This document shows positions 36,191 through 48,198 of a stretch of DNA of 64,000 bases, in pieces. Every line of letters begins with the position of its first letter. Position 1 is the stretch's first letter. The notes under the pieces are model-generated. The model ran no database searches, was not told where the DNA came from, and saw only the letters and a program-made list of their open reading frames with translations. Origin of the DNA: Utricularia gibba. Lineage: Eukaryota; Plantae; Magnoliophyta. The stretch is from positions 2,108,001 to 2,172,000 of the forward strand of contig NEEC01000014.1 in the NCBI GenBank assembly GCA_002189035.1, read 5' to 3'. The position numbers and the translations under genes were made by a program.

Positions 36191-37441
36191 TCTTATGAGT
36201 ACCGAAGCTCTTGTCCCTCCATATTCTTTCAATCTCTCAAAGAACTGATGTAACTAGGGAAAGAAACTAAGGGGATAATTCTTCAGCATCTTGTCGTGCT
36301 TCTTTGCCTCTGGTTCATCCTACTAGGCTAATAAAAGTCCTAACTAATTGATTGAAATTAAATGAATACATGGTTTTGGATTGTCGGTTAACTGGTTTTA
36401 ATTCAGTTCCCATTTGGAACTCGAATTTTTATAGTAAATATTTCCTATTTTATTAATTATTCAAACTTTTCTAATGGGCTGAGCCCATGTGCAAGACGGC
36501 CAAGTATTTTATAATATTTATAGTAATTTTAAATAACTTGTAATTAATATTATATTAAATAAAACAACTTTTAAGATTTTAATCAGTTTTCATATTTTAA
36601 TAATAGATTAAATTATCATAAAATTTAATAAAAGGACATAAATATATTTTTAAGATGAAAATAAATATTTAATAACAATTCGAGATATTTAATAATTCAA
36701 ATGAATATCAACACTAAATGTATATTTAAAATATACAAAAATTAAATAACCCACTAGAAAAGGTTACACACACACCACACATCCAATCCAATGTTCTAAC
36801 GCGTCAGGAAAATGGCATCCCTTCCACTATTGCTTGCTATTCAGGTCTCCTTTTCTTTTAGAAAGTGCCGAAAGGTATCATCTAAAGCCCCAGGCCCATT
36901 TGGTACGAGCTCGACTGTGCTTTCGTCCACTTAGGTAATGAGCGGGACCACGCTGAAGAGGCTTCCAGGGAGGATACAGCTGGTGAACAGACCTTCAGAA
37001 CCCCGACCCGAATGGTAGATGAGTGCTGCAATTTTCAATGAAGTTGGTAGTCGCATTTGCATGCAGCATCGAAAACCTTGCTGCAAGTGCAGTAGAATTT
37101 GCTGACGTTTGATTCACCATATAAAGCGGATCCATTACGTTCTCTTGTTGCCATGAATCTTATTGCGTCCGTTTGTTCGCCACTTCGAAACCTGATTTTC
37201 ACTTTAATGGAGGAATGAAGGCATTTTTACAAGTGGGGTTGAGATTGACCCGGCAGGCGGGCAGTCTCTTCTCTGGCAAAACCATTAATTCCTCTTCCAT
37301 TTGCATGCATGCCCTTTACTCACACCGTTGATTCTTTGAATGTGCTGATGAGTTGGATTGATGGACTCTTCTTCCGGGCCCATCTATAAGTAGCCCCTCT
37401 GATCTCCCATCTCTTCAATTCATTTGATCCCGAAGTTATCA

Positions 37442-37795
37442 ATGGCTGCTGTTTCAAGGTGTGTTATTGGTTCAGCCGTTCTCCTTATGGTGATTCTCTG
37501 TGCAGTTTGTGATGAGAATGTGCCACTGGGTAATAAATGTCAAACCTCTGTTTCTCTAATTTTCTTAGAATTTTGTGTTTTCTGAGTTATGCTGAATCAT
37601 GGTGTTGTTTCAGACTGTGGAGCTGCTTGCTCAACCAGATGCAGCTTAGCAGGGAGACCCAATCTCTGCAAAAGGGCATGTGGGACTTGCTGTGCAAAAT
37701 GCAACTGTGTACCGCCAGGCACCTATGGGAACTACGAAGCCTGCCCCTGCTACGCCAATCTCACTACCCATGGTGAGCAACGCAAATGCCCTTGA
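37442..37795 (+). CDS. GASA/Snakin cysteine-rich peptide
   Basis: Exon 37442-37529 (signal peptide) and exon 37614-37795, which carries all 12 Cys and ends in KCP. Confidence 0.92.
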
Positions 37796-38037
37796 ATCGA
37801 AAGCCATTTGGTGTGGCTTGTAAAGTTTTTCTCAGCTTCTTTGCTTTGGAACTGTAAGCAAAATCAATGTACTGTGTCTTCTAAAGAGATGAACAAGCAA
37901 TTGGAGAGCAAAACTGCCTATGAATCACTGTAGTGTGTGGTGAGAAGGAAGAAGCATATTACAGTGCAAGCCAACTAATTTATTCTGGTAGCTGTTACGT
38001 TTAAACACAGTAAAAGACAAGAACATTTTCAGACCTT

Positions 38038-39076
38038 CTAGGGGGGCGACTGCTGAAAGGCAGTGGAGGATGAAGAAGTGATTTGCTCATGCACCACGGA
38101 GTTTATAGAAACTGTAATGGCGTTGGCTTCAAGTTGCAGCATTATGCTTTCCAGTATTTCTACTAGGAGCTTCTTGAAATCCTCTTCACTTAGAGTCTCA
38201 CGATCCCCAGAAAGAAAAGCTTTCACAGTATCCTTCATAATTTTGTCCATCTGCAAAAACAACTCTTCCAGTGAAAAGTGCCACTCCCATTTTCAAGATT
38301 CACTGAGACTAATGGATCGTTGCATCCATATCCATAAGTAGTACCTGTGAGTCAAGGCCAAGAGGCGGTAAGCCGGCCGAAACAGCCAAGAATTCGAGAG
38401 CATCAGTGAAGTGTTCTTCTGATATTCTGCCATTTTCATCTCTTGGGACACTTTTGGAAGCAGAATACAGCATCTGGAATTCAGTGAAAACACAAGAGAA
38501 TCAAAGCCTGTAAGGGAGATTAAAAAATGATGGAAACTATGATGTATTCAAGGTCACAAGCCTTGTCCAACTCAAATTTGCTAGATAAGAATCTTTTAAT
38601 GCCACTCCCATCAAAGGTAGTATTGCTATGTGCAACAATAGCTGGTTGCTCCTTGAGGTGCTCAGCCACGCACTCCGCAGCTCTTTTGAATTCAGGCAAG
38701 AAGGTTTCTAGAGATACAGGTAGCAAAACAGCATCTCCGAGCCACACTAATGCCGGTTCAAAAATGCTACTCATGACCTTCAATGGAATATCAAACTCAG
38801 ATCTTTGTGCATCACCTTTCAGACTAAAAAAACAGGATGTAAAAACTATGATAAGGAGCTTGCCCATGGATCTTTTGCAGGGGGCATCCCCTGATCAACA
38901 GTGAGTTTTTCAAAAGCAGCAATGATGTAATCTTTGAGCGAACCACTGGATATCTCAATCTTGGACAAAATGATGGCAATATCTCGCTCATAAGACTGGC
39001 TGTTAACAAATGCGCGAAGATCCTCTCCATCAATACGAAGAATCACAATAGGATCACGTTTTAAGCCAGAAGCCAT
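38038..39076 (-). CDS. SCS: SnRK2-interacting calcium sensor (SCS)-like; only the short C-terminal ORF (about 256 aa) is intact
   Basis: Exons 39076-38864, 38777-38562, 38473-38345, 38250-38038: MASGLKRDPIVILRIDGEDL...GMPP..DPW|VM...EQPAIVAHSNTTFDGSGIKR...AGLPPLG...ILESIMLQLE..NSVVHE. Two of the introns need GC donors. Confidence 0.85.
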
Positions 39077-40307
39077 GGCAAAGATGAATTTGGGAACAGC
39101 ACTTCAAATCTAGTGTTGCCTTGTGTTTTTCATCCAAAAATTCATGAACAACCTGGGCCACAAACTATCACAAGTAAATAACTCAATGGCCAATAGAAAC
39201 CCATACTGGTAAAGCAGAAATTACAGTTCAAGCTAAGAATCAACTCAACACTAAGATGACACAGGAAACCATTTAAAGGGCCAGCAAGAAAGCTTAATCA
39301 AATTGCTGCAATATAGGTGGAACATCAAAAGAGCCCTGGAACACAGTCCAAAGCAGCATTTATACAAACACGAAGCTCTATGATAAATAAAGCAACAACC
39401 TGAGTCAATGTCATATCCTAGCGTTGGATGAAAGTTTTCTCATTCTCAACCAAACCCATCATTTTTCAACCTCAAATCACAAAGTTTCAATCACTGCAAG
39501 TAGCAGCAATAAAGATTGCTCTTTTTTTCTCTCACGTGATTCTCGGCTTCTGGGTGCAACTATTTTCTTCCGTTTTTGCAGTGCCTATCAGATGGTTGAT
39601 CTCCCCATCACCACTCACTAGTTCCGGGTACTGCACTTTTTCGCAAATTATTCATTCGTAGTGTCGTATTCAAAGGAGCATCCTCGCGGCACGTGTAACG
39701 GTAGCCATAAAGTCAAATACATCTTATCAATTTCGACGGCTCTGATTTCATCAACGTGGCGTCCATTGAGCACCCGGGTCCCAGATCAAAGATTTTCTTG
39801 AAGAACAATCCAATAAATAGTTAATGCCACATGACGCCCAAAATCAGTCAAAAGCCCACAAGACGCCTACTTGAAGCCTTGTAGGTGACGGATTTTCTTC
39901 TTTTTTCTGCTTATTTAAAAATTAATTCTAGAAATTAAAATTATAATGATTATAATTTTGCAAAATTGGAATTCTAAAAAATGAATACAAAAAACTGTTA
40001 TGCGTCATACAGTTAATTCATTCAAATTTTACAATTTTTCTTAGAGATATAATTAGAATGATTTAGATAATTAATTTCGAATTCATATTAAATAAGATAA
40101 TTTGCGTTCCTAAATTGGGCTTTTACTGGAGTCTCTATTGTTTGGTCGAATGCCCAATTCGTTAATGGGCTGGGCTTGGGACTGACCTCACTGTTTTAAA
40201 AAGTGTCCCTACATTTGGTGCTCTGAAAAGCCCTAACGAGAAACACCTTCTCCCGCCGTCTAATTGCATCCGACGACTAACCGGGACCGTTGAGAGGCTT
40301 TGCCGTC

Positions 40308-43300
40308 ATGCCGAAGCACTACCGGCCAGCTGTGAGTCTCTGATTACTTGAACTTCGAAGGTGTTTTCGTAGCTTAGGATGTTGATCGAATGTTGCAATG
40401 ATCTGTGAACCTTGAATTGCTGTTTGCAGGGGAAGAAGAAGGAAGGGAATGTGGCGAAGTACGTGACAAGGTCTCAAGCTGTGAAAAGCCTTCAAGTCAG
40501 CCTTCCTGTTTTCAGGTATTAATGGTGTTAGATTTGAGTTTAAGCTCACGCATGTGTTAATGCCTTATGTTTTATGTAGGTTTCTGTGTTTAAAGAATTT
40601 TAGGATGATTCACTTGTGCAAAAACGCCGTTTGTTTTACTTTTTTTATTTTCAGGAAACTATGCATCCTCAAAGGTGTTTTCCCTCGGGAACCAAGGAAG
40701 AAGGTGAAGGGAAACCATCATTCTTATTACCACACGAAAGATATTCTCTTCCTAAAGCATGAGCCGTTACTCGAGAAACTCCGGGACATTCGTTCTTATG
40801 ACAAGAAGATTAAGAAGGCTGTGTCGAAAAAGAATAGGGATCTTGCTGAGCGTCTGTTGACGCGGAAACCGAGTTACACTCTTGAAAGGATGATAAGAGA
40901 AAGGTCAGTATCTTTGTCTTATGATCGTTTGTAATATTTTTTCTGTTATCAGCTTTTTTGCAGTGATACTTTTTCTAATTCTGTTGGTGCCTATTATTAG
41001 GTATCCGAAATTCGTTGATGCACTGAGGGATCTGGATGACTGTCTTAGTCTGGTTCATCTTTTTGCTGCTTTGCCCGCTGTAGATAGCACTGCAAATGGA
41101 GAAAAAATTCCTGTTACGCGTGTTCATAATTGCAGAAGGTCTCTCATCATTAATTTAGTTTTGAGATTTGAGATGTTGGTTCTTTATCATTCACAGTAGA
41201 GTTGAGATAATCTGCTCATTTTTCTGACTCATTTGTTTTTGGTGATACATATAGGTTGAGCTATGAGTGGCAGGCTTACATTTCTCGCGCACATAAGTTA
41301 AGGAAGACATTTATTTCAGTAAAAGGAATATACTATCAGGTGTGTGGCACCCATACCTTGTGACTTTTTGTTGACATTTTTGCACCATTGGTTTTTCTAG
41401 TCCACGAACATTGGCTTTATAAGTGTACGTGTTTGGTGGTTTGACCCCATTTGGGTACTTCTATTAAGAGCTTGAGTGTAGACATGCTGAAGGACTGACA
41501 ATTACACAGGTTAGAATCCCCTTGGGGTCTAATTTATGTGCATTTTTTTTTCAGGCGGTAGTTGAGGGACAGACAATTACCTGGTTAACTCCGCACGCCT
41601 TGCAGCAAGTACTTTCGGAAGTTGATTACAGAATCCTGTTAACATTTTTAGAATTTTACGAGGTTAATTTTTATATGAACCCCGTATTGATTCGTGAACT
41701 ATGTTATCTTTAAGATTCCCACTACCCTTGTGTTTGCTTTTCCAGGTTGTAATGTAATTTTCATGGCTTAATATCTGTATTTGCAGGCTCTTCTTGGTTT
41801 TGTTAATTTCAAACTTTATCACTCAATAGATGTGAAGTATCCACCTATTCTTGATCCTCAGTTGGAGGCTCTAGCAGCAGGTATTTTGTCTTGTGCATGC
41901 ACTAGTTGCAGTTCACAGCCGAGGCCTTCTTAGGATGGAAGCATGGGAATTCTAATAAGTAAACACCGCCTTTGAAATATTGCAGATTTGTATGCCTTGA
42001 CAAGGTATTTTGATGCACGATCTGCGCCTCTTGCATCCCTCACTTCAGGCAGTGATCGAATGGATTTTCAACTGCTTTCTTCTAATGAGCTTGGTTCCCT
42101 AGTCCAACGAAGTGAAGGAACCAATGAAGATGAAGAAGATGAGGAGACAAGAGAGTGTAAAAACCTCTTCAAAAACATGATTTTTTTCCTAAGCCCGGAG
42201 GTGAGGTTCTAGAATTCTTGAATAAAATTTTTACTCAAAATATTACACGAACATCTTATAGGGTAACACACTAACATCCTCATCTCAGGTCCCTAGGGAA
42301 TCCTTGCTCTTTGTTATTTCTGCCTTTGGTGGGAGGGTTTCATGGGAAGGTGAGGGAGCACCGTTTGATGAGTCTGATCAGAGCATCTCTTATCAGGTCA
42401 GTTAATAGTGGTGAATAAATTCACCCACGGCGTTAACTAGCAAATCTGTCTTGCTTTTTAGATATACTGCATTGACATTCATATTTTTTTCCAGGTTGTT
42501 GATAGGCCAACTTTAGGCAGAAAATTCTTAACCAGAGAATACATCCAGCCGCAATGGGTTTTCGACTGCGTGAATGCCCGAATTATACTCCCAACAGACA
42601 AGTACATGGTGGGTTGGTAAGTTCAGTGGACCTCTTAAACATTCTTTCATCAGCTCTTCACCTGTTCTGCTTCCCTGACGAAGTATATGCTCACTCTCAG
42701 TGTTTGTCCGCCACACTTGTCTCCGTTTGTTGACAATGAGGCTGAAGGCCATGTCCCTGAATATGCGGAAGCCATTGAGCGACTCAAAGCTGCTCAAAGA
42801 AAGGAAGTCCTGCCTCTTCCTGGAAGTGTTAAGGAAGACTTTGATGACCCTCAGAGTCTAGCAGGAATTGCCGATCGTGCCGAAGCTATTGAAGTTGCGA
42901 AGAAGAAAAAAGAGGTAAGCGTGACTGTGTTCTCCTTGATACCTAGCAGGATTTAGATGTCTCCACTGCTGTTTTTGCACGCATCCAACTTGCCTTCATC
43001 ATTAATGCTTTCCTCCATTGAAGATGGCATTGCGGGAGAAGCAGTATTTCGATGAACTGAGAAAGGAAGTCCAGGGATACCAGATTGCTGACATTGCCCT
43101 TGATAATGAGCTGCCAACCCAAGCCGAAGAAGATCGTCTTGACCAGGATCTCAGACAACTCGAAGAAGATGAATCCAGTAGGGCAGAAGTTGTGATGGGA
43201 CGCAAGCGCAGAAATATCCTAAAAGCCATGAAGGTAAATATCACTTGTTAAAAGAAGTTTATACCATCTGCGATTGATTTCTTCCCCGTCCTTTCGCTGT

Positions 43301-45052: not shown

Positions 45053-45331
45053 ATGGTTATCGGGAAGATCATCAAACGTTCACTTTCTTTGGATAAAAGA
45101 GGAGTTTCTCCGGTGGATGAAGTTAGAAAAGGGCATTTTGCAGTGTATGTTGGTGAGAGTGAGAAGGAAAGGAAGAGATTTGTGGTTCCTGTGTCCTACT
45201 TGAAGCATCCGTCTTTCCAGGAATTGCTGCTTCTGGCAGAGGAAGAGTTCGGGTTCCATCATGGGAACGGTGCACTCACCATTCCGTGTAGCGAGATCGT
45301 CTTCTTGGACATGATCTCTCGTTTCAGATGA
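45053..45331 (+). CDS. SAUR auxin-responsive protein
   Basis: [41 protein letters not shown]...LTIPC; no introns. Confidence 0.93.
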
Positions 45332-45402
45332 TGAAAGTGTAGTTGAAACGTAATAGCAGCAACTATTGTGTATGCAGTAAAGAACTAATTTTTGGTACTT
45401 GA

Positions 45403-45413
45403 ATAGATTTGTA
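45403..45413 (+). promoter_or_regulatory. DST-like mRNA instability core in the SAUR 3' UTR
   Basis: ATAGATTTGTA about 70 nt after the stop; it contains the ATAGAT and GTA cores of the SAUR DST element. Confidence 0.5.
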
Positions 45414-46217
45414 TCCATTGTTGCTTGAGCATTTTTGTATAAATTTGTGTTGGAGTAAAATCTATCTGAACCATATTCTCATTAGATAAAGATCAATAAC
45501 ACTGAAGCACAAGGAGCAAACAATTACCTACTTGTATGCTTGAAGAGATGTACCCTACAACCAGATGAGGCATGAGAAACAAACGTACTTAGCCTAAAAA
45601 AAAAAGGTATACTAAGCCAGAAATCGTTAACTGGAGAAAAAAAATCCATCACATTCATCTTCCCTTTCATTCAGTTTGATCTGCACAAGTTCCTCTTCTT
45701 TCAAGTGCATTCATCATTGGATTTTGCATCAAGTTTCAATTGCATTTTCTTATGAAATAGTAGTAGAGAAACTTCCCAACAATTCTTATCTCAATACTGT
45801 TTATTCTACTGTAGAGGACAAGAAGCCATGTTCTGATTCTTCAACATGTTTAGGCACTGAATTGACTGGAATGTTTCTTTCACACTTGTGATGTTTGAAT
45901 GTCTGTGACGTGCCTTTGCTGAACCCCCACTGAAGTTCAACAACATGTATTGACGTTGTTTAGCACAAGGCCCTACTCCTTAACGTACCAGCCAGCACAA
46001 TCATGATCACTGTAGTAGATAGAATTCATGACAGATCACCAACACAAGGCTCCCATGTGCTCCTGTAACCTCAAAAAACTCTCAGCTGTTGTGGATTATA
46101 AATAAATTCTGGGATCTTACTTCGTTCTCACAACCAGCAACAACAAAAACTTGAGAGAAACATCATTCTCGCAATCCTCTTCATCTTTCCCACTTCAATT
46201 CCACGAGAGAAAAAGCC

Positions 46218-46495
46218 ATGGCGATTCGACAGATGTTAAGAAGATCTCTTTCGGGTGAAAGGAGATCGATTTCTGCTCTAACTGCAGTCCCAAAGGGCAT
46301 CTCGCTGTGTATGTCGGTCATGGTGAAAAAAAGCGGTTCGTGATACCTGTGTCGTGCTTGAACAGCCCATTGTTTCAAGAACTGCTGTCTATGGCTGAAG
46401 AAGAATTCGGATTTCAACATCCGATGGGCGGGCTCACGATCCCCTGCGAAGAAGATTTCTTCTTGGAGGTCGTTTCACGAGTTTCATATGGGTAG
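46218..46495 (+). pseudogene. SAUR with a 1-nt deletion (pseudogene or assembly error)
   Basis: ATG at 46218 ([17 protein letters not shown]). AAGGGCATCTC here versus AAGGGACACCTC (KGHL) in the paralog shifts the frame. The rest of the SAUR domain is intact in the shifted frame. Confidence 0.8.
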
Positions 46496-47925
46496 ATTTG
46501 AATCCAACTGGGAAACCTAGTGTCCTCCATACCCTCGCTTGGATTTGATTCAGTTGCCGAAAGGATGAAGACGGCCGCTCGACGACCCATTAGAGTAGTA
46601 GTAGGACTGTAGGAGTTAACTGTGAAAATTCACTGGCTCTTGTAATTCGTCTAACGCATCATTTGTTCAAGAAGTTGTCAATGATCAATATTCTCTCAAG
46701 TAGAAAAGCTCGTCATCTGCTTTAATGATCCAAATCAAAATGCTGCATTCCAAGATGCCCATAAGGAATTTGGAATCACACTCAAAGTTGCAACAGGTTC
46801 CACTCCACAGCCGGGAACAAACTTCATTGAAGTCAGTTTTCACAAGCTATTTGAGAGAACCAGTGCCTCAACTCAAGTTTCTGGTGGTATACTCATGAAA
46901 AACGGCCAACCCCATGAAAATACTACTCAGAATCAACTTCGCAATCGCTATAGAGTTGGCTCTAGAATTGAATTTAGTGTCTTACTTTAAGGGCGAAACG
47001 CCGAATTATCTTCTGAACAGAGCGCTGAAGGATCATTACTTTTCATCCATAGAGGCTCAGGTGATGTCTGTAATATCTTCGAAGCCCGCAAATTTGCATT
47101 TACATTAGCAATACTGGCTTCTGTACAAGGGCCGGGTTTCTGCTTTTGACTAGAGGCACCTTGTTTGCACTTGGTACCCTGTTTCACTAAAATGATTAGA
47201 AACATAAACACGTGACATGTTATCTCTGGTACGCCTAACCGATATGGCATTGAATTGTCGCATGAACTTGTAAACAAAAAGCTAATTTTAATGCGCGAAG
47301 AACAGATGTATCCAAAAAATGAACTGGATCAAAACGAAGCACTTCATTCAACACACACGGTGGCCCAATCCGCCTCTACACATGAGAAAGGAATAGCTAA
47401 GACACAAAAAAAGGGGATGGATAGTAAGCCAAGCCGAGTCACTAAGCCATGACACAGAATATCCAGTATTTCATTTATTTAAATAATTTGTTCATAAACT
47501 CCATTTCCGTCACCTATTGACACACTGTCGAGGACAACGAAGCCATGTGCAGAATCTTCAACATGTTTGGGATCGGAAATGATTGAGATGTTCACTACAA
47601 ACATGTATTGCTTAATGTCTGTGACGTGCATTAAGCCCCACTGACATTCAACAAGAAGCTGTGATGTTCCAACGAATAAATTGAAACAAGGCCCTACTCC
47701 CTAACATACCAGCCAGCACAAGTCATGATCAGTGCCCAAGATAAACATTCATGACAGATCACCCACATGTGGATCTCCATCTCTGATCAGATTTTCCAAT
47801 CTTTAAGATCTCCATCTTGTGGAATATAAATACACCTTGGTATCATACTTTGATCTCACAACGAGTAGCAATCCTCCTCCATTCCCTCACCAAGTTTCCG
47901 ACTTCCCCAACCTCTACAAAAATCA

Positions 47926-48198
47926 ATGGCGATTCGTCACATGCTAAAGCGATCTCTTTCCGGTGAAAGGAGATCAATTTCATCGGGAAAGGAAGTCCCA
48001 AAGGGACACCTCGCCGTGCACGTGGGTGAGGGTGAAAAGAAGCGGTTCGTTATACCTGTGTCGTGCTTGAACAGCCCCTTGTTCCAAGAATTGCTGTCTC
48101 TGGCTGAAGAAGAATTCGGATTCCAACATCCGATGGGTGGTCTCACCATCCCTTGCAACGAAGATTACTTCTTGGAGATCGTATCTCGGCTCATGTAA
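47926..48198 (+). CDS. SAUR auxin-responsive protein, tandem paralog of 46218
   Basis: [53 protein letters not shown]. Confidence 0.93.

What the first reader, a model, noticed from the sequence alone, without database searches (positions are those of the whole stretch)
38038..39640. SCS calcium-sensor gene keeps only a short-isoform-like ORF; its N-terminal EF-hand region has decayed
Seen in sequence: a clean 4-exon ORF starts at an internal Met (MASGLKRDP). The 76 nt between the upstream acceptor (39152) and that Met are out of frame (VVHEF..., resembling VLNEF...EVLSDILLG-M). Only a trace of exon 1 remains (ELVSGDGEINHL, about 39592-39624). From memory, Arabidopsis SCS makes a long form with canonical EF-hands and a shorter form, lacking the N-terminus, that regulates SnRK2 kinases differently. 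Inference: this copy is fixed as a short-form-only gene, a possible case of isoform partitioning between duplicates in stress/ABA-pathway kinase control.
Basis: partly seen in the sequence, partly recalled or inferred. Interest (0 to 1): 0.72.

Follow-up and report, generated by a model that had tools for sequence, protein, structure and literature searches.

The report
Short-form-only SCS kinase-inhibitor gene
This plant gene for an inhibitor of stress (SnRK2) kinases is transcribed and kept intact by selection, but its calcium-sensing front end has decayed into untranslated leader, so it can only make the short, probably calcium-independent form.

Summary
The observation mostly holds. Spliced transcript contigs from three studies show a 5-exon minus-strand gene.

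The only long ORF starts at ATG 39076 and gives 256 aa. [quoted passage not shown] Its Met matches Met111 of the 375-aa Brassicaceae long form.

The 76 nt before the Met are 8 nt shorter than the canonical 84 and carry TAG and TGA in frame. Today's donor lies inside the old EF-hand loop. The leader has 7 upstream ATGs.

The short ORF has no indel against Handroanthus, and dN/dS against its nearest relative (Genlisea aurea) is about 0.2. So it is a real short-form-only gene.

"Partitioning between duplicates" could not be tested, because no tool searches this genome. Handroanthus, Abeliophyllum, Nyssa and Cornus each have a full-length copy plus a short-only copy with a decayed N-terminus, so the pattern recurs.

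Verdict: new variant of a known kind, moderately interesting.

The parts
39400..39642 (-). Exon 1 of the mRNA, now a non-coding leader. The 5' end is at least 39642, where the contigs end. It holds the fossil of the ancestral N-terminal coding exon.
   Evidence: Contig joint 39400|39152 in runs X1, X2 and X7; a separate contig covers 39402-39619 in X5. No ORF longer than 14 codons lies wholly inside it.
39415..39492 (-). Recognisable fossil of ancestral exon 1. It reads ..VI*G*KMMGLVENEKTFIQR*D against canonical ..VMDGSDIMELVENEKVFSNFVD. It has three stop codons and no start codon.
   Evidence: Profile of full-length N-termini: E 4e-4. tblastn hit. DNA 20/23 at 39459-39437, reached by 1 of 500 shuffles.
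39418..39462 (-). uORF of 14 codons (MMGLVENEKTFIQR*). It is itself a relic of the old N-terminal reading frame.
   Evidence: alignment.
39153..39399 (-). Intron 1 (GT-AG, 247 nt). Its donor lies inside the ancestral EF-hand loop codons. Its first 100 nt or so carry weak remnants of the rest of ancestral exon 1 (..ELRVCINAALDCVPG.. against ..ELQPAVADIGAALGLPAQG..).
   Evidence: Joint; alignments. The global exon-1 score is only z about 2.6 against Handroanthus, so this remnant is tentative.
39077..39152 (-). Frameshifted 5' part of exon 2: 76 nt where full-length genes have 84 coding nt (VLNEFTHGKQEKISKTEFKEVLSDxLLG). TAG and TGA lie in the frame of the Met.
39054..39414 (-). uORF of 37 codons. 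It starts at ATG 39414 in exon 1, crosses the exon 1/2 junction and overlaps the main ATG in another frame. The coordinates span intron 1.
38864..39076 (-). Coding part of exon 2. The start ATG is at 39076-39074 in the context GCCATGG. It encodes 71 aa.
   Evidence: The Met aligns with Met111 of the Capsella/Camelina long form.
38778..38863 (-). Intron 2, GC-AG (86 nt). The GC donor is shared with Genlisea aurea only.
38562..38777 (-). Exon 3 (216 nt, 72 aa), the same length as in all relatives examined.
38474..38561 (-). Intron 3, GC-AG (88 nt). The donor is GT in Genlisea and the other Lamiales.
38345..38473 (-). Exon 4 (129 nt, 43 aa). It holds the EF-hand-like loop PRDENGRISEEH.
38251..38344 (-). 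Intron 4, GT-AG (94 nt).
38038..38250 (-). Coding part of exon 5 (70 aa plus TAG stop at 38040-38038).
37923..38037 (-). 3' UTR. Contigs end at about 37923-37931 in two runs. In two others they run on into the convergent GASA gene.
   Evidence: table 8.

Best explanation
This is the positional and sequence ortholog of SnRK2-interacting calcium sensor (SCS, At4g38810 family) in what is probably a bladderwort-family (Lentibulariaceae) genome.

Shown: the ancestral gene had a 231-nt coding exon 1 with the one canonical EF-hand, plus 84 coding nt at the start of exon 2. In this copy that part has lost its start codon, gained stops and suffered deletions, including a net 8-nt loss in exon 2. The splice donor now sits inside the old EF-hand loop. 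The region is still transcribed and spliced on, but only as a 319-nt leader with 7 upstream ATGs. The first long ORF starts at the Met that Arabidopsis uses for its short isoform SCS-B. It encodes 256 aa and is conserved.

Inferred: the protein acts like AtSCS-B, as a negative regulator that binds and inhibits SnRK2 kinases of ABA and osmotic-stress signalling without needing Ca2+, because the N-terminal module that makes inhibition Ca2+-dependent is absent. The uORF-laden leader probably keeps translation low, or translation depends on a downstream start site that contigs cannot show.
For: Transcription and exon structure:
- Identical splice joints appear in contigs of 4 runs from 3 studies, including exon 1 joined to exon 2.

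Family:
- The 71-aa exon-2 ORF finds only SCS-type plant proteins.
- The 256-aa model is 59-61% identical over its full length to Lamiales SCS.
- It is 51% identical to Camelina isoform X2 (265 aa), whose 375-aa isoform X1 has the same lengths as AtSCS-A and -B.
- The Capsella ortholog carries the landmarks quoted for AtSCS: Met111, Trp181 and YLRAVL at 277 (paper).

Gene architecture and synteny:
- Exon lengths are 289/216/129/213 nt against the canonical 297/216/129/213.
- A SAUR cluster lies upstream, as at the Nyssa and Abeliophyllum loci.

Decay of the N-terminus. No PROSITE-type EF-hand is left.

Selection on the short ORF:
- There is zero indel against Handroanthus over 256 codons, while the 315-nt N-terminal part is riddled with lesions.
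- dN/dS is 0.17-0.24 against Genlisea (dS about 1.0-1.4) and 0.11-0.25 against other Lamiales.
- Among the runs there are 3 synonymous and 2 non-synonymous SNPs.
- Window and Genlisea share derived N-terminal changes: GYDxD for the invariant ELDTD, and a shortened spacer. So the N-terminal change began before their split, and the low dN/dS largely postdates it.

Function of the short form: 10.1101/813717.
Against: - No protein or ribosome data exist. Seven upstream ATGs, three in good context and one uORF overlapping the main ATG, should hinder translation from the transcript seen.
- Contigs cannot show transcription start sites, so an SCS-B-like internal start is neither shown nor excluded.
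- dS is near saturation, so dN/dS values are rough.
- If the final loss of the N-terminus was recent, part of the purifying selection measured belongs to a full-length ancestor.
- The fourth EF-hand-like loop has lost its Gly in the window and carries an insertion in Genlisea (alignment). The C-terminal part therefore also drifts.
- SnRK2 binding is pure inference.
Confidence: 0.8

Rival explanations
1. Isoform partitioning between duplicates. A second, full-length SCS gene elsewhere in this genome supplies the Ca2+-sensing long form, and this copy has specialised on the short form. This adds to the best explanation rather than excluding it.
For: Exactly this arrangement is seen in four other asterid genomes.
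- Handroanthus: full-length P0172 (L005/L007) plus short-only P0059 (L002), which has a stop in the exon-2 5' part and frameshifts in exon 1.
- Abeliophyllum: full-length P0042 (L004/L006) plus short-only P0081 (L003), which has a 9-nt deletion in the EF loop plus stops.
- Nyssa: P0184 plus P0076 (L010).
- Cornus: P0250 plus P0090 (L009).
Earlier scan note s1-257957 reads the surrounding block as undergoing gene loss, which would fit a fractionating homeolog (not tested here).
Against: No full-length or N-terminal SCS protein from Genlisea aurea or any recognisable Lentibulariaceae source appeared in the three word searches. Only the best 120 hits are listed, and this genome's own proteins are not in the collection, so this absence is weak. 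The window holds no second copy (searches cover the whole window).
Confidence: 0.45
2. Lineage-wide loss. This is the only SCS gene of the lineage, so bladderworts have lost the Ca2+-sensing SCS-A arm altogether and keep only Ca2+-independent SnRK2 inhibition.
For: - The Genlisea ortholog also lacks a canonical N-terminus. Its 156 nt upstream are shrunken (47 codons for 78) and the EF loop has lost Glu12.
- The shared derived changes suggest the decay began in the common ancestor.
- No other Lentibulariaceae SCS was seen.
- Lentibulariaceae genomes are known for heavy gene loss (general knowledge).
Against: - The absence rests on capped hit lists and a fragmentary Genlisea assembly.
- In all four other lineages with a short-only copy a full-length copy persists.
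- The Genlisea upstream stretch is open in the ATG's frame to the contig end (52 codons), so a diverged N-terminal extension there cannot be excluded.
Confidence: 0.4
3. Transcribed pseudogene in early decay. The whole gene is losing function, the N-terminus went first, and the short ORF is open only because too little time has passed.
For: - The leader is heavily uATG-laden and one uORF overlaps the main ATG.
- The lineage has a long branch in the tree (0.31 stem).
- The fourth EF-hand-like loop is degenerate.
- The neighbourhood is flagged as decaying by s1-257957 (untested).
Against: - 771 nt carry no frameshift or stop, while the adjacent 315 nt accumulated many.
- The same short ORF is intact in Genlisea at dS of at least 1, with dN/dS about 0.2.
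- All four splice sites are used precisely in three studies.
- Polymorphism is biased to synonymous sites.
Confidence: 0.12
4. Artefact. An assembly indel or a wrong exon model hides an intact full-length gene.
For: An A5 run lies near the 8-nt deficit, and single-base errors are common in long-read assemblies.
Against: - Contigs from three independent studies agree with the window base for base across 38863-39146 and 39394-39642.
- The deficit is 8 nt, and there are additional in-frame stops.
- Exon 1 lacks a start codon and has three stops.
- No transcribed sequence lies between 39764 and 40157.
Confidence: 0.02

Closest known systems
AtSCS-B, the short isoform of Arabidopsis SnRK2-interacting calcium sensor (At4g38810; Tarnowski et al., bioRxiv 10.1101/813717)
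   Same: The product starts at the homologous Met (Met111 of the long form). It has a similar length (256 aa against 265), lacks the canonical EF-hand and keeps the C-terminal EF-hand-like region. It is 51% identical to the Camelina 265-aa isoform.
   Different: In Arabidopsis the short form is an alternative product of a gene that also makes the 375-aa long form, from a start site inside intron 1. Here it is the only possible product, and the transcript seen still starts at the old upstream exon, now non-coding.
AtSCS-A / OsSCS1, the full-length SCS (Bucholc et al. 2011 as cited; Holappa et al. 2017, PMC5381359)
   Same: Same gene family, same exon structure and same SAUR-linked locus.
   Different: The N-terminal 105-110 residues with the canonical EF-hand (DxDxDGKLSVxEL) are not encodable here.
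Short-only second copies in other asterids: Handroanthus CDL12_28809 (P0059), Abeliophyllum P0081 and its Olea/Fraxinus relatives, Nyssa F0562_020489 (P0076), Cornus LOC132300808 (P0090)
   Same: Each has an intact 248-257-aa ORF from the same Met and recognisable but disabled N-terminal exon sequence upstream.
   Different: Each of those genomes also has a full-length paralog. Their decay is less advanced. Whether they share origin with the window's gene is undecided (AU tests p 0.46 and 0.43).
Genlisea aurea EPS57441.1 (P0001)
   Same: It is the nearest relative, 66-70% identical. It shares the GC donor of intron 2, the tiny introns and the derived GYDxD motif in the N-terminal remnant.
   Different: Intron 1 seems to be lost there. 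The shrunken remnant is open in frame up to the contig end, so its coding status is unknown. ERD2 lies downstream instead of GASA.
SCSsister clade (At5g28830; PMC5381359)
   Same: A related EF-hand family that shares C-terminal motifs.
   Different: The window's protein groups inside Lamiales SCS sequences (100* support) and shares the SAUR-linked locus. No named SCSsister reference sequence was available for a direct comparison.

Membership tests
SCS (SnRK2-interacting calcium sensor, At4g38810 clade) | Full-length sequence homology of the C-terminal 255 residues or so to proven SCS orthologs | tested here: met
   59-61% identity to Lamiales SCS and 51-52% to the Camelina 265/375-aa isoforms, aligned end to end. 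The Capsella ortholog carries the AtSCS landmarks from the paper. It is nested in the Lamiales clade of the tree.
SCS (SnRK2-interacting calcium sensor, At4g38810 clade) | Conserved exon-intron structure | tested here: met
   Exons 3-5 have identical lengths to Handroanthus and Abeliophyllum. Exon 2 is 8 nt shorter. The intron positions are the same.
SCS (SnRK2-interacting calcium sensor, At4g38810 clade) | Conserved locus (SAUR cluster upstream) | tested here: met
   SAUR genes lie at 45053-48198 in the window, SAUR-like matches lie upstream in Abeliophyllum L003 and an Auxin_inducible gene lies upstream in Nyssa L010. Adjacency of At4g38810 to SAUR13-16 is from memory only.
SCS (SnRK2-interacting calcium sensor, At4g38810 clade) | Canonical N-terminal EF-hand that makes it a Ca2+ sensor | tested here: not met
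   No EF-hand pattern is present in the product and no Pfam EF-hand hit was found on any exon. The N-terminal coding sequence is disabled.
SCS (SnRK2-interacting calcium sensor, At4g38810 clade) | Binds and inhibits SnRK2 kinases | not testable with these tools
SCS-B-type short isoform | Product begins at the Met homologous to AtSCS-A Met111 and lacks residues 1-110 | tested here: met
   Alignments.
SCS-B-type short isoform | Arises from an alternative transcription start inside intron 1 of a gene that also encodes the long form | tested here: not met
   The long form is not encodable. The transcripts seen include the spliced upstream exon. An additional internal start site cannot be seen in contigs.
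SCS-B-type short isoform | Ca2+-independent inhibition of SnRK2 | not testable with these tools
   Inferred from 10.1101/813717 only.
Pseudogene | Disabled reading frame or neutral evolution over the whole gene | tested here: not met
   This holds for the N-terminal 315 nt only. The 256-codon ORF is intact with dN/dS about 0.2.

The most novel reading that the evidence does not exclude
The two promoter-defined SCS isoforms (Ca2+-sensing long form and Ca2+-independent short form) have been resolved repeatedly and independently into separate genes after duplication in asterids (Cornales, Oleaceae, Bignoniaceae). In the bladderwort lineage the short-only gene may be the sole survivor. That lineage would then be a natural knockout of Ca2+-dependent SnRK2 inhibition, and the old coding exon would have been recycled as a uORF-bearing regulatory leader.
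Probability: 0.35. Interest if true: 0.65.

Novelty: new variant of a known kind. Interest (0 to 1): 0.5.

Why it matters
SCS is one of the few known links between Ca2+ and SnRK2/ABA signalling. In Arabidopsis its two isoforms differ in calcium dependence, but their separate roles are hard to disentangle because they share one gene.

Genes hard-wired to make only the short form, kept under selection in several lineages, are natural experiments. They show that the short form has a selectable function of its own. They also offer material for asking what the Ca2+-sensing module adds.

If the bladderwort lineage has no full-length copy, it would show that the Ca2+ arm is dispensable in a rootless, largely aquatic carnivore.

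The case is also a clean example of alternative-promoter isoforms being partitioned between duplicates, and of a dead coding exon living on as a 5' leader.

Tried and rejected
- Pfam on each exon gave nothing useful.
- Sigma-70 and terminator scans and the repeat search are irrelevant or empty for this plant locus.
- The search of earlier findings by words, sequence and relatives was blank.
- Synteny could not assign the gene to a 'full-length' or a 'short-only' paralog lineage.
  - Genlisea shares ERD2 with the Abeliophyllum full-length locus.
  - The window shares the SAUR cluster with the short-only locus.
  - The Nyssa and Cornus short copies have MIP like the full-length loci. The ancestral order was probably SAUR-SCS-MIP-..., so these neighbours do not discriminate.
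- AU tests did not reject a single short-only clade, with or without Lentibulariaceae (p 0.46 and 0.43). This is uninformative.
- Dating the N-terminal loss from remnant identity failed. The remnant shows 61-65% identity, random gapped alignments give about 53% and coding sequence about 66%. The remnant is too short to date.
- The Sesamum short isoform P0070 is not on record as a gene.
- Searches for a full-length Lentibulariaceae SCS found none in the capped lists. This is not evidence of absence.
- The joined 256-aa model was built only inside scripts, for local alignment, trees and dN/dS. Searches used single exons by reference or database proteins.
- For that reason no structure or complex prediction was attempted.

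Full report
**What is there**

The window is plant nuclear DNA. The organism's name is coded by the tools. The finding lies on the minus strand.

Contigs of four public runs from three studies were laid on 37400-43300. They are spliced, so they are RNA-derived, and they give one consistent transcript.
- Exon 1 runs from at least 39642 to 39400.
- Intron 1 is 39399-39153 (GT-AG).
- Exon 2 is 39152-38864.
- Intron 2 is 38863-38778 (GC-AG).
- Exon 3 is 38777-38562.
- Intron 3 is 38561-38474 (GC-AG).
- Exon 4 is 38473-38345.
- Intron 4 is 38344-38251 (GT-AG).
- Exon 5 runs from 38250 to about 37923.

The contigs carry no difference from the window between 38863 and 39642. The only differences are five SNPs in exons 3 and 5. 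Three are synonymous and two are not.

In the spliced mRNA, which was built only inside a script, the sole long ORF starts at ATG 39076 (context GCCATGG). It ends at TAG 38040-38038 and encodes 256 aa. Seven ATGs precede it in the 319-nt leader. One opens a 14-codon uORF. Another opens a 37-codon uORF that crosses the exon 1/2 junction and overlaps the main ATG.

**Family**

Single exons gave no Pfam hit. The exon-2 ORF (71 aa, by reference) was searched against 1.84 billion representatives. It found 55 proteins, all plant EF-hand or 'calcium sensor' proteins. In the full-length ones the match begins near residue 105-120.

The nearest relative is Genlisea aurea EPS57441.1, which is 70% identical by BLASTP over 195 aa and 66% over 251 aligned codons. 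Other Lamiales reach about 60%. This, together with introns of 86-94 nt, suggests a bladderwort-family genome. That is an inference.

The Brassicaceae cluster contains Camelina isoforms of 375 and 265 aa. [quoted passage not shown] The Capsella member has the short-form Met at 111, Trp181 and YLRAVL at 277, matching the landmarks in that paper. The window's product aligns end to end with the 265-aa isoform at 51% identity and starts at the same Met.

In a tree of 60 sequences it sits with Genlisea (99*) inside Lamiales SCS (100*). A SAUR cluster lies upstream at 45053-48198, as at the Abeliophyllum and Nyssa loci.

**The N-terminus**

Full-length genes were mapped exon by exon (Handroanthus P0172 and Abeliophyllum P0042). 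They have a 231-nt coding exon 1 and a 297-nt exon 2, whose first 84 nt encode VLNEFTHGKQEKISKTEFKEVLSDxLLG before the Met.

The window has 76 nt there, a net deficit of 8 nt, with TAG and TGA in the Met's frame. Its similarity to the canonical sequence is real: 0-1 of 1000 shuffles reach the observed score.

A profile of full-length N-termini hits one frame at 39492-39415. It reads ..VI*G*KMMGLVENEKTFIQR*D against ..VMDGSDIMELVENEKVFSNFVD, with E 4e-4. The DNA core matches at 20/23 positions. There is no start codon at the ancestral position.

The donor now used (39400|39399) falls in the codons of the old EF-hand loop, where GAC ATT GAC TCA G|GT stands for D-x-D-x-D-G. Weak remnants of the following helix lie in what is now intron 1.

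It matches nothing.

**Is the short ORF functional?**

Against Handroanthus the 256 codons show no indel at all. The adjacent 315 nt of former coding sequence have lost tens of bases through several indels and gained stops.

Pairwise dN/dS is 0.17-0.24 against Genlisea (dS about 1.0-1.4, close to saturation) and 0.11-0.25 against other Lamiales.

Genlisea has the same four coding exons, the same rare GC donor in intron 2 and an intact last exon. Only 156 nt upstream of its ATG are available.
- That stretch aligns to the N-terminal coding region but is shrunken (47 codons for 78).
- Intron 1 seems to be lost.
- The EF loop has lost Glu12.
- The homology path changes frame twice, yet the ATG's frame stays open to the contig end.

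Its coding status is therefore unknown.

Window and Genlisea share AGGATATGACAxTGAC, which gives GYDxD where every full-length protein has ELDTD. They also share a shortened spacer after ENEK. N-terminal change therefore began before the two split. Most of the purifying selection measured between them thus acted on a gene already altered at its N-terminus.

**Wider pattern**

A search with the N-terminal domain showed that many asterids have a full-length gene besides the shorter prediction. I checked four at the DNA level.
- Handroanthus L002 has a TAG in the exon-2 5' part, and frameshifts and a degenerate loop in exon 1.
- Abeliophyllum L003 has a 9-nt deletion in the loop, stops and a frameshift. 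Its exon-2 5' part is still open.
- Nyssa L010 has stops and a 13-residue insertion in the loop.
- Cornus L009 has a stop and a frameshift.

Each keeps an intact short ORF, and each genome also has a full-length paralog.

The Abeliophyllum pair has dS about 0.5, less than either copy shows against Handroanthus (about 0.85). This suggests an Oleaceae-specific duplication. Synteny (COBRA, MIP, ERD2 and SAUR neighbours) and AU tests do not settle how many independent events there were.

**Mechanism**

Shown: the gene is an expressed, selected SCS gene that can encode only the SCS-B-type protein.

Inferred from Arabidopsis work: the product inhibits SnRK2 kinases independently of Ca2+ and damps ABA and osmotic-stress signalling. 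The Ca2+-gated behaviour of the long form is lost from this gene.

Also inferred: the fossil exon now acts as a uORF-rich leader that limits translation, unless an unseen downstream start site is used.

**What stays open**

- Does this genome hold a full-length paralog? No tool here searches it. The protein searches showed no Lentibulariaceae full-length SCS, but their lists are capped.
- Where does transcription start?
- Is the protein made?

Searches used exons by reference or database proteins.

Noticed in passing
window 38778-38863 and 38474-38561 (minus strand): This small gene has two GC-AG introns, both confirmed by spliced contigs. The first GC donor is shared with Genlisea aurea. The second is GT in Genlisea and all other relatives examined.
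   Followed up: partly
window 37537-37930: A convergent GASA/snakin-type gene on the plus strand (last exon ORF 37589-37795) ends within about 30 nt of the SCS 3' end. In two runs one contig runs through both genes, so the 3' UTRs may overlap as natural antisense.
   Followed up: no
window 40158-43300 and beyond (plus strand): The divergent upstream neighbour is a multi-exon gene that reads like Pescadillo (..[32 protein letters not shown]..). At least 11 GT-AG introns are confirmed by contigs. Only about 500 nt separate it from the SCS 5' end.
   Followed up: no
window 45053-48198 (plus strand): There are three tandem SAUR (small auxin-up RNA) copies. Two are open ORFs of 92 and 90 aa. The middle copy at about 46246-46477 has no ORF of 90 aa or more. 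The SAUR-SCS neighbourhood is conserved in Nyssa and Abeliophyllum.
   Followed up: partly
window 39690-39695: A G-box/ABRE-like CACGTG lies about 50 nt upstream of the 5'-most contig end. It would suit an ABA-responsive promoter. This is a pattern match only.
   Followed up: no
L004/L006 (Abeliophyllum full-length locus), exon 2: The full-length Abeliophyllum copy lacks the stretch of about 29 residues right after the short-form Met (VVILRIDGE..SIFS) that every other copy keeps. Its short-only paralog keeps that stretch but has lost the EF-hand. This may be reciprocal degeneration of the two duplicates.
   Followed up: partly
L001 1-156 (Genlisea aurea): Intron 1 appears to have been lost. 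The shrunken N-terminal remnant stays open in the frame of the short ORF up to the contig end, after two frame changes that cancel out.
   Followed up: partly
window 39418-39462: The 14-codon uORF MMGLVENEKTFIQR is a direct relic of the ancestral N-terminal coding sequence (IMELVENEKVFSNF). A dead coding exon is reused as a leader uORF.
   Followed up: partly
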